Source: Klebsormidium nitens (Eukaryota > Plantae > Klebsormidiophyceae). From it: 64,000 nt of DNA. Position numbers and translations under genes: made by a program. The DNA lies in contig DF236954.1 in assembly GCA_000708835.1 (NCBI GenBank), positions 298,052-362,051 of the forward strand. The letters are read 5' to 3'. The notes beneath the pieces are model-generated. The model saw only the letters and a program-made list of their open reading frames with translations, made no database searches and was not told the origin of the DNA. Shown here in pieces: positions 166 to 61,234 of the stretch (position 1 is its first letter; every line of letters starts with the position of its first letter).

Positions 166-3100
166 CTTCAATCGCCTGTTCTTCGCCCTCCTCCCCGCCT
201 TCCCCCTCCCCCTTCTTGGAGTACTGCACCTGGTGCTCCGGAATATTGATATACACCGCGTCCTTGTCGTACAGCATTTCGCCGACGTCAGCCATCGGCG
301 CATACAGCAGTTTCTCCTTCTCGTTCAGCCCCCGCTTCTTGAGCGTCGACGGCAGCGGGCACGGGTCCGGCAGTGCGCTCACGCCCGCGAGCCGCTGGTC
401 GCCCACGCCCGCAATGTGTACCTGCACCGCGAAATTTAGGGACTTAAGTTCTATAACTTTGGAGTGTTGAAACTTTGGGAGCACGGGTCCGGCAGCGCGC
501 TTACGCCCGCGAGCCGCTAGTCGCCGGCGCCCGCAATTTGCACCTGCCGCGCAGAACAAGGTCGAATTTGATTCGCAAACTACGGAAACTCCAACTGAAG
601 CGAGTGCCCGAACTGCTTCGGCTTGCCGCCTGCTTATTGCAAAAAACCAAAGCGTCCCTTGTTTTCACCCAGAAACTCGATGTCGCCGTCGAAACCTGTG
701 TTAGATGTGGATCTCCGGTCGTCTCTCGGGTCATTAATTTGAGAATACAAGCTTTTTACTTGACGGAACGTCCAAGGCAAACAAAAGCACTTGCGAAGTC
801 CCGCAATCCAAAGCCGTCGTCAATGCCCGGGTATCAGGTCTCTTACCTTCAGGTTGGGCTTCAAGTTCGCTCCTCTCAGGTACCCGTACAGCGTAACCGA
901 CCGGTCACACTTTGGGTTAGCCCTGATGGCCTCCGGATCCGTAACGTCCTCAAACCGGTCCGCAATTAGGTACGGGTGAGCGGAGCGCCACGTCAGCGGC
1001 CGAAACTTGGCCACCGAGATGAAGCGCGCCAGGTTTAGCGTCTCCCGCTTGGAGTACCTAAGGGATCAAATGGAGTGTTGATACAAGGCCTAGAGGCTTC
1101 GAATGAGCGTCTTGTCCAGTCTGAGCGTGATAGCCTGCTTAAGACGTCACACCGCTGAGAAAGTAAGTCTGGACCCGACAAGGACTAGGCACTATATGTT
1201 CGATGATCAAGATCGGGTCTGCGGAGCCCGAAAAGTAGAAGCCTTGCATACGTTTAACCCAATGCTTCATAGTGATGCGACTCGCCCTTCTCTGCTGATG
1301 GAAGCTGCGTACGATATATCATCAGGTCTGCCCGCAGAAAGCTTGATGTAATGGTCTGCATGCAGCCGAAAGCAACCCTCTGGTTCAAGCCTCGCATCAA
1401 CCTGGAATGAACAATCTAATGACCTTTCTCCGTCCTCACGTTAGTGTGAAAAACGCCAAACTAGCTGCTCTTATGCAACTCCTACCTGCCGTGGACGAGC
1501 CCGCTGAGGTAGAAGAGCTTGGCCCCGTCGTAGATCTCGGTCCAGAAGCGCTGCTTGAGCCGCTTCTTGGTCTTGCGTAGCCGCTTCGGGTCCTTGAAGT
1601 GGTCCAGGTGCGTCAGAACGCCCATCACCTTGGGGAAACCGTGAACCTGCAGCAGAAAGTTCGGAGTGTTAAACACGTCCCAGGGGCAAATTTAAACACC
1701 TCCGCTTGACTTTTATTTTCTGGGGTTGCACCAAAGGAAAAAATGCCCGTCCCAATACTTGAAAGTGCTCATGCGGAGAGCTCCCCAAGCGAACTGTGCC
1801 ATAACGGAAATCCGGGCTGCTCGTGTCCCTGTCTTTGGCGTCAGAAGACCGTTGACATTTCTAAGGGTCCCCCTCAAAGTCTGCTCGATCATCGCCAAGG
1901 TGGCATCGTTCAATCACGCTTCGAGTGATAAAATTCCAGAGGAAGTCAGGACTGCCCTGGCAGAGATTCAAGGAAGGCACTGAGATCAGGAGACCGTTCA
2001 TAGGCAAGTCCCTTATTCGTCAATTTGTAAGATTCCAGAATTCTTGTACGGTCTTCGAACTAGCACTACCAGCATAACCCGGTTGTAGAACCTACTGCAT
2101 GAGGCAGGCGACCAGGAGGCAGTATGTGACTAGGCCTCTTTTGAGGATACAGAGAAGCCACGTTCCAAAGACATTCGGTGTAATGCGTCACAAAGGGGCG
2201 CAGCCATGAAAGGCACGTCCTTCATCCTTCTTCGACTAGGTGGCTTCACGTTGGTAAGCGCCTGAATGGGTTTCATGTAAAACCCAGCGTTGCCTTCGAT
2301 CACAGCCACCAGAACCAAAGCCTTAACCCGAAGTGAGTGCGTCCCGTCTGGGGAGGGAGTTGCAGGTGCACATCGAGAATTACAGCATCACTAAAAGCCC
2401 CTAGCAAGCAAGCATTACTGATGTACAGGTTGCTAATTTCGTAATTGTTGCCTGACCATTGGGTTACCCTCAGAGTTCCGCTGACGCATATGACTCCTTC
2501 CCAACTATTCAACCTCTAGGATGATTCGAATAATCTATCAGCAGGAAGTGAAAGACTAACAAGATTGTCAAAAGCCCGAGACCATCCGAATTTCAACTTG
2601 AAGCTTAGATCATGAATTTTAACCGACAGCAATAGACATTCCTGGTGGACCTCTGCACGTCATGCCAGATCGAAAAAGGCGCCTGATTACTGATCATGAC
2701 CAACCAAGCAGATTGGCAATAGGCAGTCCCCATACCATCTGATGTCAGGGTAAGGAAAACAAGCATTTGTAACGTCATCACCATCTATGGTCGAACCCGG
2801 TGGCTCTGAATAGACAACAAGCAGTCCTGAGGATAGCCCTCGACGTATTTCCAATCATGGCCATCATGCTTTCTACGTCCACAACAAATTCTCGAGCTAC
2901 TATAATGATAAGCGGCTGCTCAGAAACTGAGCTCAAGGGAGGCGATCGAACGACTCAACCCAATGCAAAACAAAAGACCGCCTGGCACAGAGTTTATAAG
3001 CGAAACCTGGATTTAACCCTCCAGTGTTTCCAAAAATGCTCTAGATGCAGCCATGACCGTCCGAACCATCTTGAGACAGCCAAAGCCTGATACATATCCA

Positions 3101-7198: not shown

Positions 7199-7710
7199 TG
7201 CTGCCCCTCAGCAGGCTAGCCTTTTGCAGCTGAGAATGCAACGCTGCCAAAGTGCAAGGTCACAACTCCTCCATGGGGCGCCTTTTCTCTTTACTTCCCC
7301 TCTCTCTTCCCCTCTGCAACTTGTTGGTCAATACACCAATGGCAAGATACACTGTTGTACAAAAGGAGTTTTCAAGCTTGAGGAAGATGGTTGGTTAAAA
7401 GAAGGTTACCCCAACGGTTTCCTCGGCGGCAGCCGGCTTTGAGCGGCACTCGGCTAGAATGAGCATTTCCGTGACCGTTACCAGAAGCTTTAGCAAACCC
7501 TGATTCCTACATACGTCTGTTGCTTAACCATCTTCCTGGACAAGAAAGGAAAGTTGCTGAACTCTGCACAGCTCAGAACGCACTCTGCTACTACTAGACT
7601 TTGGTCGTGGTGGCGCGCAGACAAGGAGGGTGCATGTTACGGAAGACACATTTGGAAGGTTGGAACAGGGGAAGCAAAGTTGGTAGGGGCACGACAAGGA
7701 AGCAGTCCCA

Positions 7711-10700
7711 ATGGAATCCGTTGCGCAGTTGCTCAATGGCCCCTCGTGCAGCAGAGTTATTGCAACGTTTGAAACCAACAGCTATACAAATGTCCCCTCG
7801 TTGGGAGGCACATCTACTTCTGGTTACTGCCACCCCTCCCATCAGAGCCCGCACTTTCCACACCTCCCTAAATTTCAGCACTCCTTTCACCTTCCCACTT
7901 TCCAGCCTCAGTGCCATTCGAGCTCAACTCCCTGTTTCTGGAATCACAGATTACCCCGTTCAAATGCGCTTGGTAAAGCCACTCCTCGACAGCATGCTTC
8001 CGCGTCTCCCCTCGCATCATCTCTTACCACTCCCCTTGTCTCTGCTGGCCAATCAGGTATCTTTGGCAAAAGTCTAGAACATTTACAATGTCTGCAAAGA
8101 CAAAGTAGAGGACAGACAAGGCGAGGAGGCGCTCTATTGACGACCAGTGCAATGCAGATGACACGCTTGAAACCGCCAGAGGAGATGGCGGCGCCACCAG
8201 GACAGAAGCAGTTGGGGTATCCGCAGCACGTCAAGTTTGCAATTGACGAGATTTGCGAGCTGGCGCCGCGCGCGTCGCTGGCGAAAGCAATGGGAAACAT
8301 TCAGGTGCGTGGTTATCTGCTGGTGTTTGCTGGTACCTGCCGTATGACATATAAGATACAGTCAGATCGACTACATTTCTTCTGTGAAGCTCGGAAAGAA
8401 AAATGGATGTGTGCATTGCGAAGGTGTACCATCATCTCAATTCAAGGGTGGCGCCTTCGTTCGGAATCTAGTTATGACAAGACCTGAGAACTTTATTTAA
8501 CCACCATCGTCTGGAAGCGGGCCATCATAGAGACAAACATCCATGAGGTCTATTCTTTCCTCCTTGTTTCCTTCCGCAGACAGGTTGTGAGTTTTTGACA
8601 TGACTTATTTGATGGCCCCAGATTCTATACAGAGGTAACAGACTACACCTGCCTTACATAGATTCGTACAGTGTATCTTGGGGAAGAAGTTTCTTCCTTG
8701 CACCACCGGTGGGCAGCTTACGGTTTAAGCCTTACAAAGTTATTTGCCAGTTACCCACACCTCCCATTACTGACAATCACCATCGTAGTTTTGGTTGAAG
8801 TCGCAAGTATGCAAGTTTTTACAGAGAGAGCCAGTCTGAACAGACAAGAGAGGACATGCATAGGACGGAGAAAATTGCTTACGCATCGTTCCTGCAACTG
8901 AAGAAGTCCCCCAGCAGCTTGTTCAAAGGATTGATTGCTTGTGCAGTCGAGGTTGGCCCCAATTAATGCGACCAGAACACAATTCTCGTCCAAACGAAGT
9001 TGTCTCCCAGCGCCTGACAACATGTCTTTTCGAGAAGATGCACATTCCATTCCCCCAGGTCCCAATATCTTTAAATTGAAGAGCCAGGTGACCCGTTTTC
9101 CAAGCAGATTTCTCAAAAGTCGATATAGCCTCCAACTTTAATCTCTGCTCCTGCAGACGAACAGTTCATTAGCGACTGGCTGTGTGTGTTCAAGGAGCTG
9201 CAACGTCCATCCTCCGGCTGCCAAAATGAGATTGGAAAGTACTTCGACTTCGTCAATTTGATTTGTAATTATGTTACTTCAGTCTTCTCCAATGTGTTTT
9301 TTTACTTTTGCAGACGAAGCTGTCCCCCGGCGACTGGCAGTACGTGTTCAAAGAGCTCCAGCAGCGACGCGATTGGCAGCGCGCCTCGCGCGTCTTCAAG
9401 TACATGCAGCGCCAGCCAATTAACCAGCCAACGGAGCACCTCTACACCCTCATGATGTCCATTTTCGGGCGCGAGGGCATGCTAGACAAGGTGGGAACCT
9501 GTTTCTTTGTTCAATCTCTAATTTTCTGTGCTTCAGCCCCTGGCACAGGGTTCTCTTTCGTGAAAGGAATCTTTAACGAGTATATTGAAGCCTGAAGCGT
9601 AACATCCCACATACGTAGTAAGCTCAAACGGCTTTCGCGAAAGTGGAGCATCTACTCGTGGGACTGTCGAGACAGCGGAAGACGTTAGCTGGCAAGTTTT
9701 GAGGAGCTTCGGCGCTGGTCTGAAGAGGCTGATTTTGCAAGTGTTATCCGGACTGAGCCTGCCGAAAAGACAGGGGCTTTGGTGACCAACTCCTCGAACC
9801 TCCTTGATTGCCGCAGGCCCAGGAGGTGTTTGACGAGATGCCGCGGTACGGCGTCCCGCGCAACGTGTACTCGTACACGGCGCTGATCAACGCGTACGGC
9901 AAGAACGCGCAGTACCCACGCAGCCTGGAGCTGCTGGCCGACATGAAGCGCGCGCGCATCATGCCCAACGTCGTCACGTACAACACCATCATCAACGCCT
10001 GCGCCAAGGTCAGCTTTTTACTTATTGAGCTTGTATCTTGGGGAGCACAGATTTATCTCCGCCCACAACACCATCATCGACGCATCCGCCAAGGTCAGCT
10101 TTTCGCAATTGGAATCTCGAGAAATGCGGATTTTATTCAGTGGGGAGAGGAGGTCGATAGGAGGTCGGTTTTGCACATTTAAGGCGGGCATGCGGTGCCT
10201 CGACTGCTGATATCTTTGCAATTTCTGCAAGAAAGGTCGAGATTTTTAAGGTTCCTGTCGGCAACCAGAAGTCGCTTTGGTGGGCGCGTCGAGCAGTGGA
10301 AAACCTTCTGGCCCGCATGATATGACCCCTCGCTTCGTTTCAAATGGCTGTGACAAGTATTCGCAAAAGCTGAGATGTTCAATGGTCCAGAATTATGCCC
10401 TGGACATATTTGGCCGATTTGGCACTTCAAGACTGTACAACGGTCCAACGACGTTCTCTACATAGAATTCCATACGCTTCTCGCTTCTTGGCTTCTCCAA
10501 CGCGGGGGGGTAAAAATTGGGAGGGCCTGCTAGACCTCTTTGGCCAAATGCGGCACAGTCGACTATTATCAGTAAGTCCAGACATGTACTCTGGATGGAA
10601 AAGAATTACTGAGTCCAAGTGAGGTCTCTTGCAGGGGGGCTACGAGTGGGAGGGCCTTCTGGACCTGTTTGGCCAGATGCGCCACGAGGGCATCCAGCCG

Positions 10701-13700
10701 GACTTGATTACTTACAACACGCTGATCGCGGCGTGCGCTGACCGGGGGCTGCTGGAGCAAGCGGGGATGATCTTCAAGGTCATGATTGAAGCAGGGTGAG
10801 CAGCGCTTTTGGTCAATGGTAGATTCGATATGAGCTACACTCTCGAGTAGACGTTGTTCCGCTTTTTGATACCAGGTCGCGTGTTTTTCGAACTTGGTCA
10901 GGCCCAATGCTACAAAAAGACATCCTTCAGAAGCTCGTAGGCTTCTTTCAGTCAGTCAATTCTTATGCCCGCTATCTAAGCGCCTTCAACCCTTCTTTGA
11001 ACCTGGAACAGGTGAGTCCCCGACACCTTGACGTACACATCGCTGATGGCTGCATTTCCATCCGAGGAGCGGTTAACTTACATGGTGGACCTTCTTTCCT
11101 TAACCACAATGGGCATTGTTCTAACCCCGTCCTGACGCACCCTTAACCCTGCTCTTGATTCGCGACAGGTGCATCCCCGACACTTAGGGCTCCACATTGT
11201 TATTGGCTGCATTCTCCCCCACGAGCTGTTAAGTACATGGCGGACCCTTCGTTTCAGAATGGACCTTGTTTTATTTCCGTCCTAACGTACACCTAACCTT
11301 GCTCTAAACCTTCTCAACAGGTGCATCCCTGACACGTAACCTACACGTCGCTGATGGCTGCGTTCTTACGCTCCGAGGAGCGTTACAATACAGATGGCGG
11401 ACCTTCATTTTCAACTCGTGTGGACCTTGTCGTAACCCCCTGTTAACGCACCTCTAACCCCTGCTCTTAACCGTCGACAGGTGCATACCCGACACGCTAA
11501 CCTACACGTCCCTGATGGCCGCCTTCTCTTCTGAGGAGCGGTATAACGACATGGCGGACCTGCTCTTCTGGATGGAGGACGTGGGCACCCTCCCTGACGT
11601 CACTGCTTACAACATCCTCATCAACGCTTACGGCAAGGTGAGGACACGGCTTTGATCTTCCACTGCTCGTTTCTACCACCAAGCCCAGTGTCGGAGAGTT
11701 TCAGAAAGGGCGTAAGTGGGACTCGGTTGAGGTATGTGTGACATCCCTTTAAGATCATGTATTCATTGCCTGTCTCAACGCCTTGTGGGCTGCTTTCGCC
11801 CGTGACACGAGATTGCATCTCATACTTCTTTTGGCTGCTAACGATGCGGGCACTTCACCTTATCGAGAGCAGATTTGAGTAAGCTTTCCTTCCTCAGGCC
11901 GGCCAGAAGTGCGAGGCGGTGGCGACGTTCAAAGGCATGAAGCGCGCGGGCGGAATAATGAATAATAATTCGAAAAATAAGCTACTGAATCCTCAAGGCG
12001 CTTCGCTCGTAAGTGCGTTAAGCGCTTGGCATACATTCTAACTGCTTTCAATCTGACGGTTGAACTTTTCATCTCACAGGCCGGCCAGTTCCGTGAGGCG
12101 TCGGCGGCGTTTAAGCGCACGAAGCACGGTGGCGTGATGACGATTGAACGACTTTAAGCACTTTGCTTCTGACTGATCTTCAGCTTCGCATTCAAATACT
12201 ATTGGATCTGACGGTTGAAACGTTCATCTCACAGGCCGGCCAGTTCCGTGAGGCGTCGGCGACATTCAAGCGCATGAAGCGCGCCGGTGTGTCGCCGACT
12301 GTCGTCACGTACTCCACGCTTTTGGACGCTTTGGGCAAGTACGGACAGTACGAGAGTGTCCGAGAGATCTTCCGGGAGATGGTGGCGTCCGAATGCGCGC
12401 CGAACGTGGTGACGTTTAACACGATGATCGACGCATTTGGGCGGGGGGGGCACTACAAGGAGGCGGTGGATCTGTTTGAGAGCATGGAGGAGACGGGAGT
12501 GGAGGCGGACCACATCACATACAAGTGAGCGCTTTATATTCGATCCGTTACACCATTTGAGGGTTTTGAATCTTGAGAATGGGCAATCTCATAACTTGAT
12601 CATCAAGTTTGTGCTTGAAGTTTTGGAGAGTGAAACATGTGAATGAGGCACTGAATTTGTTCGGCAGCTGTCGGGGGAGAAGGGGTAAAAGCCGAGATCA
12701 CATTGCCTCCCTAAGTAAGCCCCCTCTAAGCATATCCAAGTTTCTGGAACCCTGGAAAGTTTGTTATCGATGTAAGAGTGGCAAGCGGCCGGTCTTGAAA
12801 GAGTCGTCCGACTTCCAACCCTAGCCTCGAAAGTCCTAAAGCTTCGTCGGGCGGACAATTTCTAAGGTCTTCTGGTGTTGGCATATGCCGCCTCCCAGGG
12901 GCCTGCTGGGCTTGCGGGATGGGCGGCTCACGAGAGAGGCGGCGAACGTGGAGCAAGCGCTCGGTTCAACAATCGAGGTCTCCTTGCTTCCAATCCTAAT
13001 CTTCAAAGTATCACAACTGCTGAAGATCTACTGACTTTTGACTTCTGTCATTCTAGCAGGGTTCTGTTGGCGGCTTGCGGGAATGGCTGGGCGGGTTCGC
13101 GAGAGGTGCGGCAAAGCCTTTGCTCTGCACCTTCCGACTCTCTACCCCAAATCATCAGTAAGAACATGTCATCAGCGCCAATGTCATCGGCGCAATTTGC
13201 TAAAGGTCTGCTGACTCTATATTCCCAGGATTTGTTGGCGGCCTGCGGAATGGGCGGGCTAGCGAGAGACGCGGCGAAGCTGGAGCAAGCGCTCACTTTA
13301 CTAAGTTTCCTCTCGCTGCCACTCCAAACCCCAAAAGCGTACTACTGCTGAAGGTCTACTCACTGTCAGGGTTTGTCACTTCCCAGGGGTTTGTTGGCGG
13401 CCTGTGGCATGGGTGGGCTAGCGGTCGAAGCCTTTACTTTCTCAAATTCTACTCTAACTCTGAAAGTTCTTGAGTTTATTGAGTGCAGACCGCTAAAGCG
13501 CTAAAGGTGTACTGACCTTGACTTCCCAGGGGTTTGTTGGCGGCCTGCGGGATGGGCGGGCTAGCGCGAGATGCGGCGAAGCTGGAGCGGCACATTCGGC
13601 GGCGCGGTTTCCCTGCGACGGTGGACATGTACAACAGCATGATCGAGGCCTACTCGAAAGCGGCCCTGTACGAGGAGGCGCTCAGCGTGCTGGACGGGAT

Positions 13701-27471: not shown

Positions 27472-27534
27472 CCTCTACCTTCGGAAAACGATGCTCGAGC
27501 AAGGAAAAGTCCTCTTATTGGCCCTTCTTTTGCC

Positions 27535-41188: not shown

Positions 41189-41208
41189 NNNNNNNNNNNN
41201 NNNNNNNN
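41189..41208. other. Assembly gap (20 N)
   Basis: Run of N characters. Confidence 1.
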
Positions 41209-43223: not shown

Positions 43224-43833
43224 TCTGCTTTGTATGAGAGGTTTGTCAGCTTGCTTCGTCGGAGGCGGCTCCAGCTAGGTGCTAGTAGTAGTAGTACTAC
43301 TAGTACAGGGCTGCGGACGTCTGGCCCGCACAGAGAAATGATCTGATTCTCAACAGTCGGACCGACCGCCGGCGTCCGCACCGCCGAATGGACCCTTTCT
43401 TCGCGCGCGCGTTCTCAAGTGTCCTCGCGCCACGAACATATCAGCACAGTGACAGAGCAGCGCAGCTCAGCTCCCCCGCAGCTCTGCTTCGTAAGGCTAC
43501 AGCCTGAGCAAGTTCGACCAAGTTCGACTACCTAGTCAGCAAGCTGCAGTGCGGCGCGGCAAATCAAGCGCAAAGAGAAACTAGGGGAGGAGATAAAGGA
43601 GATCAAGCTTCAAAATCCATGGCGGCAGTGGCATGGCCCGGTGCCAGGTTGAACGGAAGTGGAACTTGGCGACTTGACGAGGAAACAGAGCTGAGAAAAA
43701 GGTTATCTGCAAGGGCTCTGGAGCCAATGCCAATTGTGGCTAAAATAAGAGTCAGTCCTGCATCATGCAGTTTCTGGGCTGGACAGAACAACAGAATGCA
43801 AGTGAAGTTTTCAGGCTGTAGCAGGTGATAAGT

Positions 43834-49800: not shown

Positions 49801-52800
49801 GGGTGGAGATGGGCCCGGAGCCGCCGGGGCCGATCGTGTCCGTCCGATGCAATTGTACGGGTACAAAGGTGAGGTGGCTCTGAAAAGCGCCTTTTGTTGT
49901 GTCTACGGAGCAGTTACCCATGCCTGTGTAGAAGTTCCGATAGGCGCGGAGCAGCTTTGCCGTGCTATGGGGAAACTGTATCTGAAGCACGATGTCAAGA
50001 CTATAAATAAAGAAGCACCTTATAAAAGAAAGACAAGGCATGGCTCAACATTTTGGCATTCGGTTTTCTGTAGTTTCTTTGAAGCAAAAGCCCTTCGCTT
50101 CGGGACATTCGCGGAAGTGAGGGCGTAGTATCATTCCTGCTGCGTCCCGGATCTTCCCTGGAAAACAGTCCTGTCCCGCAGAATCGAGGGTGAGAGATAT
50201 ATCGTTTATGAATCCCCTCCTTTTGTTCGGATGCTGACTTTTTTGGAAAGCCACGTGTCTCTTATCTGGCAGGTCAGCGTGCTCGCGAGCGAATCGGACG
50301 GCTCCCGGCGGCCCGACTCGAGGCTGTTCGTTTACGAGGTGGAGCTGGATGCATTTCAAGTGTACGACTTCAAGTAAGGTTCCCTCACCGTTCCAGAAGT
50401 GCCTTTTTGAGCTCGCTGCACTTTGGTCAAAGCCATTCTGGATGGAAGTTGCCTTTTGAATTCCAGAATCGGATGGGTCGCACTGAATTGGAAGATCTGA
50501 AGGGCTGGGAAGAGCACTTGGCGGCGCTTGGTGACGGATTCGGACGCAAACCGCAGTGCAGAATGAAACCGTTTCGGCTTTCTTGCCAAAGTTCAACTTG
50601 TCTTATACCAGGGGGAAATGAATCGACAGCACCGGCTCCGCTCACGTCGCTGCGAATCGGACGCTGATAAAGAAGCAGTTTCAATAAGCAATTCTTCAAA
50701 AGCTTGCGCCGCTATCGACCGAGGCGGAATTGCTCAGCGTAACACTGTCCATGCTTGCACGAAATTAAGGTGCTGATTGAGTTTCCACCACGTCGGTGTG
50801 TACAGGCAGTCGCGCAGGCGACCTATCAACCACACGTGGGACGGGGAGGAAGCGCGGATGGTCGCGGTCGAAACAGAGCCGGTAAGTAAAAGTCCTTTTG
50901 GTTTTCGCAATTTCCGCTACCTTCTCATACCAACGCAAGGTGTAGGGAAGGCGAGAAATGCTCCAGGTTTTGGAATGAAAAGAATCTGCGCGTACATAGA
51001 GTGTAAACCGTTTTCCTCTAATTGATGATACAATTTCATCCGACTAGTCAATTTTCATTCCTAGGTTGATTCTGGTGGGCATCAAAGCTCGGCGTCTTTG
51101 TAAGATATCAATTCTTTCCGAAACCTGGAAATTGGGACTGGTAGGAAGCACATGTCGTGGAACAGAAACCCGAAACGACATTTTTGAACACAGGATTCGG
51201 ACGCCTCCAATCCGGACGGCCTTACCGTCAGCCGCGAGGCGGACGTCCAAGTCACGACGCTGTTTGCGACCGGGGAGCACGGCCTTCTGTACCAGGACAA
51301 GGTGGGTGTCTTCACAGCCTAGGTATTTGCGGATTCAGGGTCTCAAGGTTTTAGTGTCCTAAGGGTTTAGGGTTTCATTGTGTCGGGTTACCAGGACAAG
51401 GTGTGCGTCTTTTTAAGAGAGAAGAAGGTTGCACGACTCCAGAGAAAGTGTTCACCGCACGTGGCCTGCGAAGAGACGCGAATGAAACGTCTTCAGTGCT
51501 TGTCAGAAAATAAATCGAACCACAGATGATACTTCTTGGTACACAAGGACAAGTCGGTGCGCGCAATCCCGCAATTCACCAGATGAAGCAGCCCAGAAAC
51601 GCTGATCGGTTGCAATGACACTTTAGGGTTAGTAAACTCAAGATTTGTAAGATCACCAGCCTGGGATGGGTGAAACAAATCAGGGGTTCAGGGTGAGTAT
51701 GGGTGCGGTTTTTGTAGGTTCAAGTTGTAGCGTTTGGTTTGAGCTTACTATTCCTAAATTGTCGCGAAGTCTGATCTGCTCCTTCATCGCCGCAGGTCGA
51801 CGCGGACCCTTCTTGGAGCGCCCTCGTCGGCCTCCACGTACCCTTCCTTTTCTTCGCATCGAAGCCTCCAAACCCGCAGCCACTTTTGCGCGTGCCCATG
51901 CGCGATTTCGCGGGCATGGAGTCCGTCGACGCGCGGACGAGACGCGCACTTCTGGACTTCAGCTACCAGGTAAGAAGAGAGTAGATAAAGTTCTTGAAAA
52001 CTTTTGGTGCTTAGATTTTTCAGGTCCGGTGAGATGAAGCTGGCTCCCATGCTGCGAAGTGAACGAAATATTCAAATATGCCGCGAAGTTTCGGGTAGAA
52101 GGAGAGGGGCCAGCAAGCAAGTTCTGCTGCAGCCTTGCACTTCAGAGCAGGTTTGGCGACTGTTCGATGGTGGAATCGGAGAGCGAGGTTTCGTCCAAAC
52201 ATGCCGCACATCCCACATAAATCTTCCAGAAAGCGTGGGTGCCGCTAATCTTAGTAATCAGTCAGTGGTTTAAAGTACAGATTAAACGCAGCAAGCAGCC
52301 AGCCAAGTGCCTGCTGTTGCTTGTACAACTGAGAAAGGAATATTTCATTTGATTCGATATCTTTTCTTGGATGTTGCACGGAAGTCGTTGCGCATGTCGA
52401 ATCTCCTCACGAAGCAAAGTGTTCAGAATGCAAAACGAAGCAAGTTGGCGGTCAACAGGCAGCATGGACAAAGCTAACCATGCCCTGAGACTTATTCGCC
52501 GTGTGCTCTTGAAGACCAATATCTAGGTTTGGGTTGAAGGTCGAGATTTTTCTAGATGGCGGTCGGGAACATGGACGAAGCATACCGAGCGGTGAAGCTG
52601 ATTCGCAATCCGGGAGTGTGGGCGAACATGGCGTCGGTCTGCGTCAAGACGCGCCGCCTCGACGTCGCGGAGCACTGCCTGGGGAACATGGGGCACGCGC
52701 GCGCGGCTCGCGCAGTGCGGGAGGCCAAGGAGAAGGAAAAGGTCAGGAGTCAAGAACGGAAGATCATCGGCGTGACCGCAATCCAGAACGCGGTATACAA

Positions 52801-55800
52801 ATCCAGTACAAGTTTCGAGTTTAGAATCCGATTCACGTCGGACGAGTGCTTGGACAGAACTTCTTTGAAGGAGCCAAGAAGAGAAAAGGTGGGACCAGGG
52901 TTTTGAAAGGAGGAAAAAAATGAGTTTTAAAAAAACTTTCCTTTTTGACACGCAGAGGATGCTGGCGTAATGCAGGGAGGGATCTGTACCCTCTCGACAA
53001 CGAATTTTTTCTCCAGCCGGTTGGAATTTTTTGATGATACTGATCCTTTCTTGATGAAAACTCTCAAGCTGCATTCTCTTTCCACGTCGGCGCCAATGAG
53101 AGTTCCAGTCACTGTCGTTTTTCCAAAAAAGCGCTCCATATTCTTATTTCTAAATCTCAATCTCTTTTGCCTACCACGCAGGAGGCTGACGCGCAAATCG
53201 CGGCCGTCGCGCTGCACCTGGGACACGTGGAGGACGCTCACAAGCTCTACGTGGCGTGCGACCGGTGGGACCTGGCCAACCGGTTGCTCCAGTCGTGCGG
53301 CGACTGGAGCCGCGCTCTGGAAGTGGCCGGGAAACACGACCGGGTGCATCTGCGCACGACGCACCACAGCTTTGCGCGGCACCTCGAGTTTCTGGGCGAC
53401 CTGGACGGGGCGATCAAGGCGTATGAGGAGGCCGGAACGCACCGGTGAGGCTACCAGGATTTTGAAGAACGACTTACAAGTATTTGAACACGGAGTGTCC
53501 GTGTTACGCAAGAGCTGGACGGAGCAGACTTGTTGGGAGAGCTTCAACTTCTGGGTTACAGGACTTTGTCAATGCCAACCCCTTATTCCCTCCTGGTCCT
53601 ATGATTGCTCTGTTTTGGCCAACCCTGACAAGATCCTTCATCGGAGGATTTTGCACTCAACCATTGATTTCTGCATCTTTCAATCCAGGCACAAATTGCC
53701 GTGTTGGCAGAGTGAAGCGATTGAAGAACGCGAACACTTGATTTCCTGTAGATCTGATCAAGCTGGATTCTGAAGACACGTCTTTAAATCCTGATCTTTA
53801 AACCTGGCAGGCACGAGTTCCGCGCCTGCTGGTGAAGACTGGCCGTTTCGATGCTCTGAAACAGATCCTAACACCCTTTCAATATTTTGAAGACGCTTCG
53901 TCCTAAGCCCCCTAAACCCTCAACTTGAACAACGCTTAACCCGGATAATCCTTAAAACTCGTTTTGCCAGGCACGAGGTTCCGCGCTTGCCGGTGGCGGC
54001 TGGCCGTCTGAATGCTTTTATTCAGATCCTAACACCCTTACATTTTAGAAGACCCTACTTCCTAAGCCCCGTAAACTTTCAACCATAACAACTTTCAACC
54101 CGGATCTTCCTAACCCCGTTGTGATAGGCACGAAGTCCCGCGGCTGCTGGTAGAGGCTGGCCAGATCGAAGAGCTGGAGGCTTACGTGGCGGCGAAGCAG
54201 GACAAGGAGCTGACGCAGTGGTGGGCCAAGTACTGCGAGAGCCACGGCAACCTGGACAAGGCGCTCGAGTGCTACCACTGGGTGAGGCGGGCTTCCGTTC
54301 CGGTTCCGTTCTGCTCTTGTCCTCGTGTTTTTAATTCCGCTTGTCCGCTTGTCTCCGCGTTCCGCAACGACGCGGAGCCACGGCAACCTCGACAAGGCGC
54401 TGAAGTGCTACCACTGGGTAAGGCCGTCCCTCTTTCCGGTTCCGTTCCGGTTCCGTTCCGGTTCCGTTCCGCTCTTGTACCCGTCTGCGTTCTGTTATGC
54501 CTGTCAATTCGTTCCCTAACCGACGCGGAGCCACGCAATCTCGACAAGGGGCTTGCGTGCTACCACTGGGTACGGGGGGGCTTCCCTTCTGGTTCCGTTC
54601 CGGTTCCGTTCCGACTGTCCTTTGCCTTGCTTTGATCCGCTTGTCCTTCCGTTCCGCAACGACGGGGAGACACGGCAACCTGGACAAGGCGAAGTGAGTG
54701 CTACCACTGGGTGAGGCCGCCCTCCGTTCCGGTCTTTACCTTTCTTTATTCTGCTTATAGGTAGATCCATTTTGCAACGACGCGGAGCCACGGCAACCTG
54801 GACAAGATGCTCCAATGCTGTCTCACGGCGACTTCCGGTGTCCCTATTCCTATGGGACGTTACTCCTGGGCGTTTCCTTCATTTACTGCTTTATTGCCTG
54901 GCAAAGCCCAAAAGTATTCCATTGCTTGTGGACGACGCTTGCGGTTGGACTTAATGACTGCTGCCGTCCGTTGATGAACCACTTCCTGTCTATTGCGTTT
55001 TCAGCCTTCATAACTCCTCGTTTTGTTCGCTTTCCGCACTTCTCCCCTTCCAATACTCTTCCGTTTTTTGCTCTTCGTTCGTTCCCTGTCTTTTCGTTGC
55101 CCGGTCTTCAAGCTGCCGTTTGCTCCTACAAGCTGAAAATGGACTGATTGTAGCAATCCGGTTTGGTCCCGGCTAAACCGTTTCCTGCTTACAGACGACT
55201 TCCCGTCATGTCTTGTGCCGAGCCTAGCAACTTTGCAAAAGAAAGAAGCGCAAAGGGGAGGCATTGTCAGGCACCTTCTATGAAGCAATCGAAGGAAGTC
55301 CCATAGTTGCGTCGCAATCAAAGATTCTGTGGACAACTTGAGCGTACAGTTGGTGAAGGCTCTACAGAAGCAGATCAAAGAAAGACTCGGTATAAAGGAT
55401 ATGGGCAGATGTAATCCAAGTCGGTTGAGAAGTAGACCAGCCACCGAACCCCTCCTTTTCGTTGCAGAGCGGTGACGTCCTCTCCCAAGTCCGCATCCAC
55501 TGCTTCCAAGGCGAGCTCGCGGCCGCGCGCGCGCTCGTCGACGCGACGGGCGATCGCGCGGCCGCCTTCCACGTTGCGCGCCAGCTGGAGGCCCGGGGCG
55601 ACGTTCCGGGCGCGATCCGCTACTTCACCCGAGCGGAAAGCGTCAGCCGGGCGGCGCGGCTTGCACAGCGGAACGGAATGGACGCGGAGCTGCTGTCGCT
55701 CGCGGCCGCGGGCACGCGCGCGCTCGCGCTGACGTCAGCGCGGTACTTTGAGGAGAAGGGGGCGTACGACAGCGCCGTACTACTGTACCAAAAGGTGGGA

Positions 55801-58800
55801 GTTGCTCTGCGCCTACGGATTGCCCCCCGGGGGTGGCGCCGCCTCATCGAACCTCGCCCTGTTCATCGTTATGTAGCTATGCAAGAGCTAAACACGCGAT
55901 ACCCTCTTCAAGAGATTTTCGGATTTTATCCTGGATCTCGAGACAGAAGACTGAGAAGACCTAAGGGAGATGGATGGGCGTGACAACGAAAAAGCGACTT
56001 CGAGTATTCGGAGCCGGTCAGTCTCTACGCAAAGGTCTATCGCTGTTGCCTTCCGTCTTTAGTCTGTTATTGACTCATGGGGAAAATAACGGCACTCGTT
56101 TCCAGGGACGCTAACGCGCGCCTCGAAAGCCTTCAACTTTCACTCATCTTCGTGAGCAAAACTCACCAAGCTTCGTTTCTTTTCAGGGCGGAAACCTGAA
56201 CCGCGCAATCGACCTATGCTTCAAGGGCCAGTTGTTCGACTCTCTGCGGACCATTGCGGACAATCTCAAGGAGGATGCGGACCCAGCACTGCTAGCAAGG
56301 TGGGATTGCTTTCCAACTCTTAACAAATTGCTGCTGATTTTGGCCGTGATACATAGAACTCTAAAGTAATATGTAGAAGACTGCCTATGAGTTGTGCCTG
56401 CTGAATCGAGCCGTGGCAAACAGAACCCTGAGGTATGCATGATCGACCGGCTCCTTAAACATTGTGTGAGCTGTGAATTGTGTGACCAACGGGAGGATTG
56501 TTCTATCTTAATGCGGGGGATTCAAATACACATCTGCGCGTTGATGCTTATTTACAGGACATTTGGAAGACCTTTGAACTCCCCGTGCCTATATTATGCT
56601 GGCTTATCACATGCCTGCTTGTTACGAGAGCCAGACGGTGGCGAAACAGGACAGAAGACATAATTCTTCCAGAGCACGTGATAGAGGAACGAAGGGAAAA
56701 TGCTTTCAAAGCTCAAAAGGCAGTCCTTCCCCTTCATCAGAAATCGCGTGCACTGACTCCGGTTGAAGCATTCTGTGAAGTGCCAATGTTGAAGTGCAGC
56801 CGGACGGTTCCGCGCAGGTGTGCGGACTTTTTCATGGAGCACGAGCAGTACGAAAAGGCGGTGCATTTACTTATTGCCGGAAAGAGCTTCGAGCAGGCGA
56901 TCGACTTGGTAAGGACCTTTTGGATCAAAGTGACTATTATCGAACCGAGTAAAGTCGCTTGCCTTCCAGTCTCCCCGCCGGAATGTTGACAAAGCTGTCC
57001 TTCAGCAAGAAAAACTAGCCTGTGCCGTCGAGTTAGCGGTAGAGGCTCGGAGGATTGATTTTCCATTTTTGCAATTTGCCATGCACATATTTGGACTTAC
57101 CAGTTCCGCTTACTTTCAGCGGAATTGGAAGCTCCACTGAATTATCGTTCATTGATGGTTCTTTATGAACATCAAAAAACGCACCTTTCTCAAGAGTAGT
57201 CCTTTCAAGCAATCACATTCTTTCAATAAACGTCTTGAATAAAGTCGTTACTTCCGGGCAGCTTTGTCCGCGTCAAAAAACGTATCCTATCCTTCTCTTT
57301 ATCAAATTTCCTCCAAAACGGTAACCATCCCCTATAGCATATCCCCTTTTTTGCAGTGCGCCTCGCATGACGTCGTTATCACTGAGAGCATGGCCGACGG
57401 GATGACTCCGCCGAAGGCTGAAGGCGGCGAGTCTGGCGGATTCCGCTCCGCCCTGATCCGGCGGATCGCGGAATGCTGCGAGGCGCAGGGCTCCTTCCAC
57501 CTGGCGTGCAAGAAGTTCACGCAGGCGAATGAGCGCGCGCGCGCGATGGAGGCGCTGCTCAAGTCGGGGGACACCGAGAAGATCATCTTCTTCGCCAACG
57601 TATCCAGGTGAGTCGTAACACATTCTGCAACGATATCCTACTGACGTCAGGCCTGTGCTTGTTCAGACGGAAACATCTGATTCAAAGCAGCTACCGCGCC
57701 CCTCGATTTGAAAATCTGTATCTCAATCCCCCGCCATATCTGGGGGAACCAGAAAGATGGTCGGGTAGAAACCCGGGAAGATGGAAACTAGAGATTTCAG
57801 CTGACGTTAGGCAGAGCACGGCCTCGAAGAATGTAAGTATCCGAAAGCATGGGCAGCAAGATCTGTCGTTGTCACCATTTTTGAGCGCGCGGAGTGGCAA
57901 ACGGTCCGGCATCTGAGATTCTTATCCAAGGACAGCCAGGATTTGCAAGAAAGCGACGCAAATACTTGTTTTCGTTCGCTCCAAATCCAAACGCAGAAAG
58001 TCTTGAACCACAGACTGTTACATCATACCCTCCTTAACCACTCAAAAATGAACCCGGGAGATTGAGAAGATTAACTTCAAACCAAGGAGATGGAACCTTA
58101 ATTTCAAACGACGTGAAGGCTGGCACCCCGCAAACGCCGCAAGCCGTGCGCGTTGGCGGTCAGAGACTTTGGCCACGACTAGCACGCCAAGGCCCTGAGG
58201 CGTCCAAGCTAACCCCAAATCCTAAACCATAGACCTAAAAGCCAACACCCAGATCTCTGATGTCAAATGAAACCCAATGTTTAACCCCGCAGGCAGCGCG
58301 AGCTATACGTGCTGGCGGCCAACTACCTGCAGAGCCTGGACTGGCACGCAAGACCTTTGACCCGCTCAATTCAACCTAACCCCGACCTAACCCAAAACTC
58401 GTTAGCCTTGACTTCATAAACTTCGCAACGTAACCTAGCCCCAACTCGCAGGCAGCGCGAGCTGTACGTGCTGGCAGCCAACTATCTGCAGAGCCTGGAC
58501 TGGCACGCGGACGGCGAGGTGATGAAGGCCATCGTGCAGTTCTACACCAAGGCGGGCGCCGTCGAGAGCCTGGCCGCCTTCTACGACTCGTGCGCCATCA
58601 TCGAGATTGACGAGTACCGGGACTATGAAAAGGTGAGGGAATCTGGTTACAAAGCTTGTGGGTTGAGTTTGGTTAGAGCGCTTGTGGGCTGAGTTGGGTT
58701 AGAGCGTTTGTGGGTTAAGCTGCATCAGAGGCTGGCGACCTTCTACAACTCGCGTGCGATCATTGAGATCGAGTTCACCGGGACTACGAAAAGGCGAGAG

Positions 58801-61234
58801 ACTCTGGTCCAAAATGGTTCTGGATTCGGTTTGGTTAGAGCTCTTGTGGGCTGAATTGTAGTAGAGCATCTGTGGGTTAGAATTTTTCTGACCCTGGCTG
58901 CCTCATTCGTCTCGTGCGCCGTCATCGAGATCGACGAGTATCGGAAGTACGAGAAGGTTAGGGCTTGTGTGAAGATTGGGATAGAGCGTTTGTGGGTCGA
59001 GTTAGTAGACTTTTTCGCGGTTGAACTGGGTCTGAGCGCTCCTGAACCTGCTTGGCTCAGAGCGTTTGTGATTTTGTATTATCTATGATGAGTCCTGCAG
59101 GTGGGTGGGTCTCAGGCGACTCCTCTTTTCTCCTAGTTGCTACACTCACAATGGATCTTTGCTCAAAGTCGATCTTTCCAATTCTACTCAAGATTATGAG
59201 AAGGCGAGGCTGCGGGCTCGTTTCATAAATTTCATGTACGCCCCTCGATGTTTTGAAAGCGAGCGAAAAAAAGCTGTTCCTTCGGTTTCACATACCGCCT
59301 CTTTCCAATCACAGGCCTTGGGCGCGATGCGCGAGTCGCTAAAGTACGCGAGCAAGTCGCGTGCGGCCGCGCGCGACGCGCTCGTTGCGGACCACACCGC
59401 GCGGATCGCCCTCGTCGAGCAGTTCGTGCAGGTGGGTCTCTTCCGCCTGAAAGGGCTCCGCTCGAGAGAGCTGATAAGAGCATGATTCAAAGAACCAGAA
59501 GCGGGTTGTGAATCTCTGCGTCAACTGATTTAAAAGGCCCCACCAAAATTGGATGCTGTCCAAGTGATGACGCATTTGAGGCCCGGGGGCGACTCTGTGC
59601 CATTTCGAGTGCGCTCGGGGGCGTCAGAGTAAATGATTTGAAATGACAGATTTGCTGTAACCGCTCCCTTCAAGCCCTGTAACTGCGTTCAATCTGTTTT
59701 CAGATTGCACTGGAAGCTCACGATGCAAGCATCCTTGATTGCAGGCTCGCAAGCTGGTGGCAGAGGATCCAAAGCAGACGGTGGCGCTCTGCAACCGGCT
59801 GCTGGAGCAGCTGCCGGCGACCGCGGCAGAGAGCGAGGTGAGCGCTGGGGACGCCCTCCCCAGAACGGACTCAATTGCCTTGCTGTAGGGGTTGAAGAGA
59901 GGAAGATGGAAGATTCCGAGAAATTACATCGTGATGCCTTTTGCCGAGATGCGATCAGAGGGAAGATTTAAGAAACTTCATCCAAACATCCACTTTTCGA
60001 GATGCGATTAGAGGGAGATTTCAAGAAACTTCAGTAGACTGCATTTTGTCGATATGCAATAGATCTGTCACTTGTGAGGCTGATAGGGGCCAAGAGCGAA
60101 CTTCTTCTGGCCACACCCGTGACTCGAGAGATGCATTTTGAGAAAATGCAAAATCTGACGTAAGAGAACGGGGCTGCAATCGAGGTTGCATAAGTGCGGG
60201 TTCTGGAAGAAGCCTCTGCATTCCCAGCAGCCTACATTCCCTGCGTGACGTCATAACCGAGTCTGATTCTTCTGCTCCGCAGTGCGTCGTCCGGGCAGGT
60301 GACGTGTACGCGCTTCTCATCGAGCTCTACTATAGCCGGAACGATTACCCAACGGTAAGCGGCAAGCTGACGCGTCTTTACGAAACCGGGCCTGGATGCG
60401 TGTTCTCATGCAAGAAGAGTGGATAAAAAGTCGGGAATGTTATAATTCGTTTGATTGAACCTCAAAGTCTAACTTCAAAATCACAAGCAAAGGCCCGGTG
60501 CTGCAGTACGGCATATCTATGGAGCGTGCAAAATGATTAGACACAGATCTCGGAGGCCGCGCGGCGGACGAGGCAGCTTGTCGTGTAAAATGCAATTCGC
60601 ATGTAACTATGAAAATTTGCCACTGTCAAAGGACTGTTTTCGCGCGAAGATTGAATCGTTTGCGCGCTACGACTTGCGCAGGCATTCCAACTGCTGGAGC
60701 GGATGCGCGAGCGCGGTATCGTTCTCGCGCCGTTTCTCGAGCAGGCGATGGTTGTGGAGATACACCAGGTCAGATTCCATGCTTTCCTGTCGAGATATGG
60801 TCACATGTGCCATCGTTCCTTGAGGCGAATCTTGAGCAGTAAGAATTCACACAGATGAGAGGCTTTAGGGTGAGCGGAGATAGACGCACCTTACAAGTGG
60901 CTCCTCTTCCATGGCCCACAAAATGGTCATCCTGCACAAGTCCTGAAAACTTGTACAAACGTGGGGCTGGCATGCCTCTTCAATCACCCCGCCGTTGGAA
61001 TACTCATGAAGAAGCTTTTGATCCCCCCTTCATTGATTGACACGATTCTTCTTCCTGGTTCAGCCCGGTAGTACCATGATCTTCGAAGAGTCTCGTGTAA
61101 GACTATTGCTGTTGCCTAACCTCACAAGCTTCTTTTCGATTCAGGCCGTTGGCGTCGAGATGAGGGACACAGAACCTGACGAAGACTTCCGAGAAGAAGA
61201 GTTGGACGAGGACGTAATCGAGGACGAGGAGTGA
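43834..61234 (+). CDS. IFT140: Intraflagellar transport protein 140 (IFT-A; WD40 + TPR). 28 exons: 43834-43974, 44501-44618, 44869-44990, 45227-45360, 45683-45770, 46235-46381, 46952-47183, 47579-47740, 48294-48448, 49057-49269, 49638-49868, 50273-50373, 50806-50881, 51194-51301, 51796-51969, 52556-52741, 53182-53444, 54128-54281, 55468-55794, 56187-56299, 56818-56908, 57357-57607, 58452-58632, 59315-59431, 59745-59837, 60283-60354, 60682-60768, 61145-61234
   Basis: [30 protein letters not shown]...[96 protein letters not shown], acidic C-terminus. All phases are consistent. Confidence 0.97.
53800..54810 (+). repeat. Echoes on both sides of IFT140 exon 18, with (GGTTCCGTTCC)n spacers on the donor side
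   Basis: ag|gcacgag.t.ccgcgc at 53811 and 53971 (real 54128). gagccacggcaacctggacaag...tgctaccactgg|gt ends at 54417, 54569, 54710 plus a partial copy at about 54783-54807 (real 54281). Confidence 0.96.
58280..59205 (+). repeat. Echoes on both sides of IFT140 exon 23
   Basis: Acceptor echo at 58293 (real 58452). Donor echoes ending 58793, 58956 and a short one at 59203 (real 58632). Confidence 0.95.

What the first reader, a model, noticed from the sequence alone, without database searches (positions are those of the whole stretch)
475..59205. Exon echoes: polar tandem copies of exon edges plus splice sites fill introns of four unrelated genes
Seen: about 30 partial copies of an adjacent exon edge lie in introns of BMS1, pTAC2 (exons 2-9), RbgA and IFT140 (exons 14, 16, 18, 23). 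The arrangement is polar. Upstream copies are always acceptor plus exon 5' part; downstream copies are always exon 3' part plus donor. The working exon uses the innermost site. These are not transposons or introners, since each array is derived from its own exon. Inference: a recurrent local duplication process centred on splice junctions that lengthens introns and creates decoy splice sites. I know of no named system for this, but cannot search the literature here.
Basis: partly seen in the sequence, partly recalled or inferred. Interest (0 to 1): 0.92.

Follow-up and report, generated by a model that had tools for sequence, protein, structure and literature searches.

The report
Splice-junction copy arrays padding introns
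Many introns in this green-algal DNA hold rows of worn, unused, roughly 157-base copies of their own exon border; lancelets have the same kind of repeat ("mirages"), and here it is common and has clearly lengthened introns.

Summary
I count 32 partial copies ("echoes") in 16 arrays.

- **Specificity:** 13 of 64 mapped exon borders have an echo in the adjoining intron. None was found in the intron on the wrong side or in 1,924 non-adjacent comparisons.
- **Spacing:** the median is 157 nt.
- **Splicing:** RNA contigs from three studies use only the innermost sites at all PPR-gene introns laid.
- **Coding:** the echoes are non-coding.
- **Splice dinucleotides:** AG or GT is kept in 27 of 32, about the neutral expectation.

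The polarity follows from the geometry of a tandem duplication across a border, so it needs no separate cause.

Related contigs from two metagenomes carry arrays in the orthologous genes, often at the same borders. Their breakpoints differ, so the arrays arose independently and repeatedly.

With exon-derived DNA masked, border-spanning arrays outnumber intron-only ones 8 to 1-2, against about 40% expected. Acceptor arrays outnumber donor arrays 17 to 4. This is moderate evidence for a link to the border.

The kind is already named: "mirages" in lancelets. I found no paper on it in this alga. This scan has already noted the same thing many times elsewhere in this genome. The assembly gap touches none of the arrays.

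The parts
481..552 (-). Acceptor echo of a BMS1 exon (exon starts at 421 and runs leftwards); spacing 122 nt, exon part 63 nt at 89% identity, AG kept
   Evidence: (D16); BMS1 named from an AARP2CN domain in the neighbouring exon 823-1065 on the minus strand
8994..9313 (+). Two acceptor echoes (copy borders at 8994 and 9157) of PPR-gene exon 2 (9314-9490); spacings 163 and 157 nt; AG lost in the outer copy
10065..10103 (+). Donor echo of PPR-gene exon 3 (ends at 10008); spacing 85 nt, 36/39 identical, GT kept
   Evidence: (D4); the working donor at 10008 is the one used in RNA contigs
10502..10556 (+). Acceptor echo of PPR-gene exon 4 (starts at 10635); spacing 129 nt, AG lost
10986..11480 (+). 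Three acceptor echoes (copy borders at 11012, 11169, 11321) of PPR-gene exon 5 (starts at 11481); spacings 157, 152 and 160 nt; homology runs through the whole unit at about 71%
11872..12234 (+). Two acceptor echoes (11898, 12080) of PPR-gene exon 6 (starts at 12235); spacings 182 and 155 nt
   Evidence: (D5, D9)
12893..13529 (+). Four acceptor echoes (12899, 13060, 13229, 13387) of PPR-gene exon 7 (starts at 13530); the array has a two-unit higher-order structure (lags 302 and 332 nt)
   Evidence: D8, D17; alignment A2
13813..13992 (+). Two donor echoes (copy borders at 13857, 13990) of PPR-gene exon 7 (ends at 13728); spacings 128 and 133 nt; GT kept in both
   Evidence: (D13)
14240..14509 (+). 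Two acceptor echoes (14246, 14371) of PPR-gene exon 8 (starts at 14510); spacings 125 and 139 nt
15436..15778 (+). Two acceptor echoes (15449, 15607) of PPR-gene exon 9 (starts at 15779); spacings 158 and 172 nt
   Evidence: (D12). The RNA joint laid at 15446 is an artefact of ending the laid stretch at 15800: it carries 2 mismatches, and its loose end matches 15814 onwards
34480..34845 (-). Two acceptor echoes (34640, 34836) of an RbgA-like GTPase exon (34479 to 34296 on the minus strand); spacings 161 and 196 nt; AG kept in both
   Evidence: (D15); MMR_HSR1 domain in the upstream exon
52443..52499 (+). Weak, old acceptor echo of IFT140 exon 14 (starts at 52556); spacing 111 nt, 39/52 identical
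53805..54127 (+). Two acceptor echoes (53811, 53971) of IFT140 exon 16 (54128-54281); spacings 160 and 157 nt; whole-unit homology of 77%
54282..54830 (+). Four donor echoes (54418, 54570, 54711, 54828) of IFT140 exon 16; spacings 117-152 nt; the unit carries a (TTCCG)n microsatellite
   Evidence: (D3, D6, D10, D11)
58288..58349 (+). Acceptor echo of IFT140 exon 21 (starts at 58452); spacing 159 nt. It is 95% identical over 62 nt (5 nt of intron plus 57 nt of exon), while the intron-derived rest of the unit is only about 55-80% alike. A possible older copy lies near 58131-58190
   Evidence: D19; alignment A1
58633..59205 (+). Donor echoes (58794, 58957, and a probable third near 59203) of IFT140 exon 21 (ends at 58632); spacings 161 and 163 nt; a 26-nt sub-repeat lies inside the unit
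   Evidence: (D2, D7)
42234..42529 (-). Control case: a 147-nt tandem duplication (72% identity) wholly inside an intron of a minus-strand gene. It lies 67 nt from the donor and 90 nt from the acceptor and holds no recognisable exon edge
   Evidence: (D18)
41189..41208 (.). Assembly gap (20 N); not part of any array

Best explanation
The echoes are decayed head-to-tail duplications of short DNA segments (85-196 nt, median 157) that straddle an exon-intron border. This is the same kind of repeat as the amphioxus 'mirages'.

How it works: each duplication leaves a complete working border next to the exon body. It also leaves a spare copy (splice site, some exon edge, some intron) inside the intron. 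Only the copy joined to the rest of the exon gives the right mRNA, so the spare copies always lie outside it. That produces the polarity.

Shown here:
- The spare copies are non-coding.
- They keep their AG or GT about as often as neutral decay predicts.
- The dominant transcripts ignore them.
- The arrays arise again and again, independently in related lineages.
- Units are gained and lost.
- Some arrays also duplicate as double units.
- The net effect is intron growth.

Inferred, not shown:
- The duplications come from replication slippage or unequal exchange of nucleosome- or Okazaki-sized pieces.
- A roughly two-fold excess at borders and a three- to four-fold excess at acceptors reflect either a mutational bias or differing harm to splicing.
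- The extra likeness of exon-derived parts comes partly from constraint on the working exon and partly from occasional gene conversion.
For: - **Local and direct only:** 40 direct against 2 inverted self-matches, with a peak at 100-200 nt.
- **Specific to the adjoining intron and the correct side:** 13 of 64 borders score 42-119, against a maximum of 33 in 1,924 non-adjacent controls and 24 in wrong-side controls.
- **Whole-unit homology shows tandem origin:** seen in the PPR exon 5, 6 and 7 arrays, the IFT140 exon 16 arrays and the exon 21 donor array.
- **Spacing:** median 157 nt, with 17 of 32 spacings in 150-170 nt.
- **Working sites only:** RNA contigs of three studies join only the innermost sites at the six PPR-gene introns laid.
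- **Not coding:** 173 non-synonymous against 148 synonymous differences.
- **Splice dinucleotides:** kept in 27 of 32, with 23.9 expected if neutral (p = 0.14).
- **Independent origins:** in the related contig L001 the orthologous PPR gene has the same intron positions. It has acceptor echoes at exons 2, 3, 6, 8 and 9, but with other breakpoints: exon part 111-118 against 57 nt, 56-98 against 36, 63 against about 50, and 60 against 46. The IFT140 exon 21 acceptor also has arrays in L002 and L003, with an exon part of about 80 against 57 nt.
- **Unit turnover:** L002 and L003 each have one extra unit next to the working border.
- **Border excess:** with exon-derived DNA masked, 8 border arrays against 1-2 intron-only ones, where 40% border arrays are expected.
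- **Precedent:** amphioxus mirages with 150-160 and 157 bp units that do not disturb splicing (PMC3087553).
Against: - The likeness of copies drops sharply at the border. Identity is 0.78-0.85 in the exon part and 0.54-0.63 beyond 10 nt into the intron part, where unrelated sequence gives about 0.54.
- In the IFT140 exon 21 acceptor echo the contrast is 95% against about 55-80%. Neutral decay of one duplicated unit does not predict this, even allowing for constraint on the working exon.
- In L002 against L003 the arrays are more alike (0.91) than other intron DNA (0.78; p = 1.4e-5). That is close to third codon positions (0.86). This could mean constraint.
- The counts behind the border excess are small.
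- RNA contigs cannot show rare use of echo sites.
- The DNA contigs laid come from what may be the same sample as the assembly.
Confidence: 0.75

Rival explanations
1. The duplications are purely random local tandem duplications, with no link to splice borders. They fall anywhere. Those inside exons are removed by selection, and intron-only ones fade quickly. Border-spanning ones stay visible because the working exon changes slowly.
For: - With ancestral introns of about 350-700 nt and 157-nt units, geometry alone makes about 40% of tolerated duplications border-spanning.
- An intron-only 147-nt duplication exists.
- An in-frame 81-nt coding repeat exists at 30571-30894.
- Earlier notes of this scan report whole-exon duplicates just beyond the window.
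- The exon share of the unit (0.15-0.65) does not depart from uniform.
- I found no excess of shared borders between lineages over chance.
Against: - With exon-derived DNA masked, so that detection rests on intron DNA alone, the count is still 8 border arrays against 1-2 intron-only ones (binomial p about 0.004-0.012 at 40%).
- Acceptor arrays outnumber donor arrays 17 to 4 (p = 0.007). Random placement does not give this.
- The lineage-specific units in L002 and L003 lie next to the working border.
- Border copies should be more harmful than intron-only ones, not less.
Confidence: 0.3
2. The arrays are kept because they do something. They could act as decoy exons that hold splicing factors and tune splicing or intron retention. 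They could also act as periodic GC-rich blocks that phase nucleosomes in long introns.
For: - Exon-derived parts stay far more alike than intron-derived parts.
- Arrays are more conserved between L002 and L003 than the rest of the intron (0.91 against 0.78).
- AG or GT is not purged (27 of 32).
- The period is close to a nucleosome repeat.
- The PPR gene is heavily loaded in two lineages: 14 of 32 borders against 8 of 76 in IFT140 (p = 0.0004).
Against: - Arrays at the same border in different lineages are of independent origin and differ in number and breakpoint. Most borders have none.
- AG or GT retention is not above the neutral expectation (p = 0.14).
- Conservation between L002 and L003 is not clearly below the third-codon-position rate.
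- No echo-site junction appears in RNA contigs.
Confidence: 0.1
3. The echoes are short patches of exon edge, about 40-90 nt starting a few bases inside the intron, copied roughly one nucleosome length away. The copying would be by template switching or through an RNA intermediate such as the lariat-exon 2 molecule. Arrays with whole-unit homology would then be secondary.
For: - The high-identity block often ends 3-17 nt into the intron.
- The identity profile steps at the border.
- The IFT140 exon 21 acceptor echo is a clean 62-nt block.
- Acceptor arrays are in excess.
- A CTGAC motif that looks like a branch point lies about 15-30 nt upstream of the AG in the PPR exon 7 units.
Against: - Careful alignment finds homology of the intron parts in most arrays: alignment A2, the exon-masked scan, and 82% over 55 nt upstream of the exon 21 echo.
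- Donor echoes carry GT and intron bases, which no splicing intermediate holds.
- Copies are never inverted, as template switching would sometimes give.
Confidence: 0.1
4. The repeats are an assembly artefact, or copies of a mobile element.
For: The assembly is short-read based and has N gaps. The Logan DNA contigs break at one array, at 12097-12232.
Against: - Copies are 5-35% diverged with indels.
- Unspliced RNA contigs of other studies cover echoes without a difference.
- Three related contigs from two other samples show the same kind of arrays.
- Each family is confined to its own intron and derives from its own exon.
Confidence: 0.02

Closest known systems
[quoted passage not shown] Reported in Adh3 (Canestro et al. 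2002, as cited in PMC3087553), in globin genes BflGb6 and BflGb9 (PMC3087553), and in troponin C and PGBD5 (PMC3902484)
   Same: Head-to-tail repeats whose unit spans an exon-intron border. Both 5' and 3' borders can be affected. Units are 150-160 and 157 bp in the globin genes, against a median of 157 nt here. Many copies keep AG or GT, and normal splicing is not disturbed. Copy number changes between haplotypes there and between related lineages here.
   Different: The host here is a green alga of the streptophyte line, not a chordate. The repeats are far denser: 13 of 64 borders overall and 9 of 16 in one gene. Most copies are older (65-95% identity against 81-100%). I have no data here on allelic or somatic instability. 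I saw an acceptor excess and a gene-level difference in load, neither of which is mentioned in the passages I read.
Human F7 intron 7: a 37-bp VNTR whose first element spans the exon 7 / IVS7 boundary (PMC1557585)
   Same: A tandem repeat starting at a donor border gives a row of identical, potentially functional pseudo-donor sites that stay silent. The most upstream (innermost) donor is the one chosen.
   Different: It is a single locus with a short unit and donor side only. The paper concerns splice-site choice, not intron growth. The 5'-to-3' scanning explanation does not cover acceptor arrays, which are the majority here.
Intron gain by tandem duplication of an exonic AGGT segment (Rogers' model; potato RdRp case PMC4974935; Drosophila cases PMC2891723)
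   Same: A local tandem duplication creates duplicated splice signals without changing the mRNA.
   Different: In that model a new intron is born inside an exon. Here the introns already existed: the positions are identical in the related contig L001. The duplication only lengthens them.
Introner elements (mobile, intron-generating elements)
   Same: Both add intron DNA and supply splice signals.
   Different: Introners are dispersed families of one sequence. Here each array derives from its own neighbouring exon and occurs nowhere else in the window.

Membership tests
Mirage-type junction minisatellites | Copies lie head to tail (tandem, direct orientation) within one intron | tested here: met
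   Regular spacings, 32 values with a median of 157 nt. Matches are 40 direct against 2 inverted. Whole-unit homology is seen in at least 6 arrays.
Mirage-type junction minisatellites | The repeat unit spans an exon-intron boundary: it holds exon edge, splice site and intron sequence | tested here: met
   Exon parts are 29-84 nt, followed or preceded by intron-derived parts. AG or GT sits at the aligned position in 27 of 32 copies.
Mirage-type junction minisatellites | Both acceptor (3') and donor (5') boundaries can be duplicated | tested here: met
   12 acceptor and 4 donor arrays in the window.
Mirage-type junction minisatellites | Regular splicing of the host gene is not disturbed | tested here: met
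   RNA contigs of three studies join only the working sites at six PPR-gene introns. The IFT140 model built on innermost sites is open and colinear with homologues. Rare use of echo sites cannot be excluded with contigs.
Mirage-type junction minisatellites | Copy-number instability (allelic or somatic length variation) | not testable with these tools
   Only indirect evidence: L002 and L003, two related contigs about 82% alike, each have one unit the other lacks.
Introner elements / transposons | Dispersed copies of one element at many unrelated loci | tested here: not met
   Each family is confined to one intron and matches its own exon. Maximum score against other introns is 33, against 42-119 in the adjoining intron.
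Intron gain by tandem duplication (Rogers' model) | The duplication creates an intron at a new position | tested here: not met
   All nine PPR-gene exons have identical lengths and borders in the related contig L001, so the introns predate the arrays.

The most novel reading that the evidence does not exclude
Splice borders, above all acceptors, are true hot spots for nucleosome- or Okazaki-sized duplication in this lineage, and perhaps in lancelets, which have the same unit size. The exon-derived parts of the spare copies are then held alike by gene conversion or by selection. On this reading the arrays are a maintained, border-linked chromatin or splicing feature and not plain junk.
Probability: 0.2. 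Interest if true: 0.8.

Novelty: new member of a known kind. Interest (0 to 1): 0.55.

Why it matters
- **Intron growth.** The arrays show a simple and very active route by which introns grow. They account for half of the intron DNA of one gene here, in a close algal relative of land plants.
- **A natural splicing experiment.** The arrays supply dozens of intact but unused splice sites next to the working ones. That is a natural test bed for how a spliceosome picks the right site, and for what nonsense-mediated decay hides.
- **A shared unit size.** The unit is about 157 nt both here and in lancelet globin genes. This hints at a common physical cause, such as the nucleosome or Okazaki-fragment length, which could be tested.
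- **Intron gain and sliding.** The arrays are the raw material proposed for intron gain and intron sliding. The relatives compared here do differ from this alga in three IFT140 intron positions.

Tried and rejected
- **Exon finding by GC3 of open frames.** Both strands score alike, so I replaced it with RNA contigs and homologue chaining.
- **First echo-extraction script.** The probe's own diagonal masked the arrays. I redid it with short probes.
- **Search for this alga's own IFT140 protein.** It returned only homologues at up to about 80% identity over single exons. The exon map therefore rests on homology plus splice rules.
- **Pfam on the short parent exons of BMS1 and RbgA.** No hits. The gene names rest on neighbouring exons. 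Orthology of the PPR gene to pTAC2 was not tested.
- **Selection on echo splice sites.** AG or GT retention is 27 of 32 against 23.9 expected (p = 0.14), so there is neither conservation nor purging.
- **Coding constraint on echoes.** Rejected: 173 non-synonymous differences. The third-position excess (48%) fits changes in the working exon plus relaxation of composition.
- **Tight centring of the border within the unit.** Rejected: the exon share ranges from 0.15 to 0.65 once the relatives are included.
- **Site-specific hot spots.** The overlap of loaded borders between lineages is no greater than chance: PPR gene 4 shared with about 4.4 expected, IFT140 1 shared with about 0.5 expected.
- **Ongoing conversion as a general rule.** Rejected for at least one echo: the orthologous echoes in L002 and L003 share many derived differences from the working exon.
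- **Shorter donor units.** Donor units have a median of 136 nt against 158 nt for acceptor units, but this is not significant (p = 0.065).
- **Literature.** Searches for a Klebsormidium paper on this found none in the library.

Full report
**What is in the window.** The sequence is gene-dense eukaryotic DNA with about 50% G+C. Earlier notes of this scan name the organism as the alga Klebsormidium nitens; I did not verify the name. Pfam and homology place the following genes:
- BMS1 on the minus strand at the left end.
- A PPR gene on the plus strand at about 8.1-17 kb.
- An RbgA-like GTPase on the minus strand near 34-36 kb.
- IFT140 on the plus strand from 43.8 to 60.8 kb.

**Exon maps.** RNA contigs from three studies give the PPR-gene joints 10008|10635, 10795|11481, 11637|12235, 12524|13530 and 13728|14510, all with GT..AG ends. 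A sixth joint was laid on the echo at 15446 with two mismatches. Its loose end matches 15814 onwards, so it belongs to the working exon at 15779. The misplacement arose because I ended the laid stretch at 15800. For IFT140 I chained tblastn hits of homologue P0152 and chose splice sites by dynamic programming under phase rules. The result is 25 exons and a 1479-aa product without stops, colinear with residues 1-1387 of P0152.

Self-comparison shows 40 direct and 2 inverted matches, with 17 direct ones 100-200 nt apart. For each of 64 exon borders in the two mapped genes I aligned 30 nt of intron plus 60 nt of exon edge to three targets:
- the adjoining intron, where 13 borders scored 42-119;
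- the intron on the other side of the exon, where the maximum was 24;
- all other introns (1,924 comparisons), where the maximum was 33.

A finer scan gives 32 echoes in 16 arrays: 12 at acceptors and 4 at donors. Spacings have a median of 157 nt, and 17 of 32 fall in 150-170 nt. Arrays make up 48% of the PPR gene's intron DNA and 12% of IFT140's.

**Not an artefact.** The copies differ by 5-35% and carry indels. Low-depth unspliced RNA contigs from other studies cover echoes at 10239-10498, 12670-12918, 13093-13559 and 15328-15548 without a difference. Three contigs from other samples show the same kind of arrays (see below).

**The assembly gap.** The N run at 41189-41208 lies more than 1 kb from any array. 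No array, exon or probe used here crosses it, and its flanks share no similarity. I could not test continuity across it.

**Anatomy of the units.** The exon-derived part is 29-84 nt. In several arrays the homology runs through the whole unit, as a tandem duplication predicts. This is so for PPR exons 5, 6 and 7, for both sides of IFT140 exon 16, and for the IFT140 exon 21 donor. The PPR exon 7 array has a two-unit higher-order period.

After a tandem duplication across a border, only the copy continuous with the exon body yields the correct mRNA.

The echoes are not coding, with 173 non-synonymous against 148 synonymous differences. AG or GT survives in 27 of 32, and 23.9 are expected from each copy's own identity (p = 0.14). 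The spare sites are therefore neither purged nor preserved.

**Related lineages.** A translated PPR exon found one relative, P0264, at 88% identity. Its contig, L001, comes from a JGI metagenome. It is colinear with the window, and all nine exons have the same lengths. L001 has acceptor echoes at exons 2, 3, 6, 8 and 9 and none at donors 1-8. Where both species have an array, the breakpoints differ: the exon part is 57 against 111-118 nt, 36 against 56-98, about 50 against 63, and 46 against 60. Each echo also carries its own species' exon variants. The arrays therefore arose independently.

Two further contigs, L002 and L003, are about 82% alike through their introns and carry IFT140. They have arrays at the exon 20 donor and the exon 21 acceptor. 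L003 has one at the exon 22 acceptor too. Neither has any at exon 16. Their exon 21 array has an exon part of about 80 nt, against 57 nt in the window, so it too is independent. Some of their echoes are orthologous to each other. Each of the two has one unit the other lacks, placed next to the working border.

The load differs by gene in both lineages. The PPR gene has echoes at 14 of 32 borders and IFT140 at 8 of 76 (p = 0.0004). Shared borders are no more frequent than chance.

**Is the process tied to borders?** I masked all exon-derived sequence and rescanned, so that detection rests on intron DNA alone. Eight border arrays remained detectable, against one intron-only repeat in the mapped genes. 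A second intron-only repeat is the 147-nt duplication at 42234-42529 in another gene. From ancestral intron lengths, random tolerated placement predicts about 40% border-spanning events. That gives p of about 0.004-0.012. Acceptor arrays outnumber donor arrays 17 to 4 (p = 0.007). I read this as moderate evidence for a border and acceptor bias, on small numbers.

**Unexplained points.**
- Likeness between copies steps down at the border: 0.78-0.85 in the exon part, 0.70 in the last 10 intron bases, and 0.54-0.63 beyond, where unrelated sequence gives about 0.54.
- Constraint on the working exon explains part of this, but not the IFT140 exon 21 echo, which is 95% alike over 62 nt against about 55-80% in its intron part. 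Occasional gene conversion would fit that case.
- The orthologous echoes of L002 and L003 share many derived differences, so conversion is not continuous.
- Arrays are more alike between L002 and L003 (0.91) than other intron DNA (0.78, p = 1.4e-5), and near third codon positions (0.86). I cannot tell constraint from lower mutability or alignment noise.

[quoted passage not shown] Their units are 150-160 and 157 bp in globin genes, and they do not disturb splicing (PMC3087553; PMC3902484). The human F7 intron 7 VNTR is a donor-side case in which the most upstream site is chosen (PMC1557585). I found no paper on this in Klebsormidium in the library searched. The scan's own notes record the same phenomenon in many other windows of this genome.

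**Verdict.** The repeats are real, dense and well supported, and they are by-products of local duplication that enlarge introns. They are a new member of a known kind, with open questions on border bias and on what keeps the exon-derived parts alike.

Noticed in passing
L002:7385-7760 and 10155-10615; L003:9380-10117; window 51796-52741 and 55468-55794: IFT140 intron positions differ between this alga and the two relatives. The window's intron between exons 13 and 14 is absent in the relatives, which instead have an intron about 50 nt further on. They also split the window's exon 17, and probably exon 9. The relatives' extra introns are flanked by 7-8-nt direct repeats (TGATCAG...TGATTAG; TACTTCAG...TACTTCAG), and in L002 both start with GTAGGAG. 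This looks like intron gain with a target duplication. The introns share no other similarity by blastn.
   Followed up: partly
window 30571-30894: Four tandem copies of an 81-nt unit (85% alike; 81 = 27 codons) lie inside long open frames on both strands. I found no Pfam family for it. It may be an in-frame coding repeat.
   Followed up: no
window 11647-11686: A 40-nt stretch in PPR-gene intron 5 matches very high-depth short DNA contigs (word depth 567, against about 20 around it) and RNA contigs that run on into other sequence. It is a short dispersed repeat of unknown kind.
   Followed up: no
window 42145-42596 (minus strand) and 43222-43830: An unnamed minus-strand gene starts near 43222 and diverges from IFT140, so the two probably share a promoter region. 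Its 452-nt intron holds the intron-only 147-nt tandem duplication.
   Followed up: partly
L001:12171-12455: In the related contig, a tandem array with a 70-nt period begins about 10 nt before the end of PPR-gene exon 9 and runs into the intron. It is a donor-side array with a very short exon part. The window has no counterpart.
   Followed up: no
L002:13431-13731 against L003:12863-13182: Between the two relatives, the whole acceptor array upstream of IFT140 exon 21 is 86-92% alike, intron-derived parts included. The rest of the same intron is 68-79% alike.
   Followed up: partly
window 54293-54626 and 58635-58738: There are secondary repeats inside the donor units: a (TTCCG)n microsatellite in the exon 16 donor units and a 26-nt sub-repeat in the exon 21 donor unit.
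   Followed up: no
window 26123-26389 (minus strand): An open frame with a PLAC8-family domain (E = 2e-14). This gene has no echo arrays.
   Followed up: no
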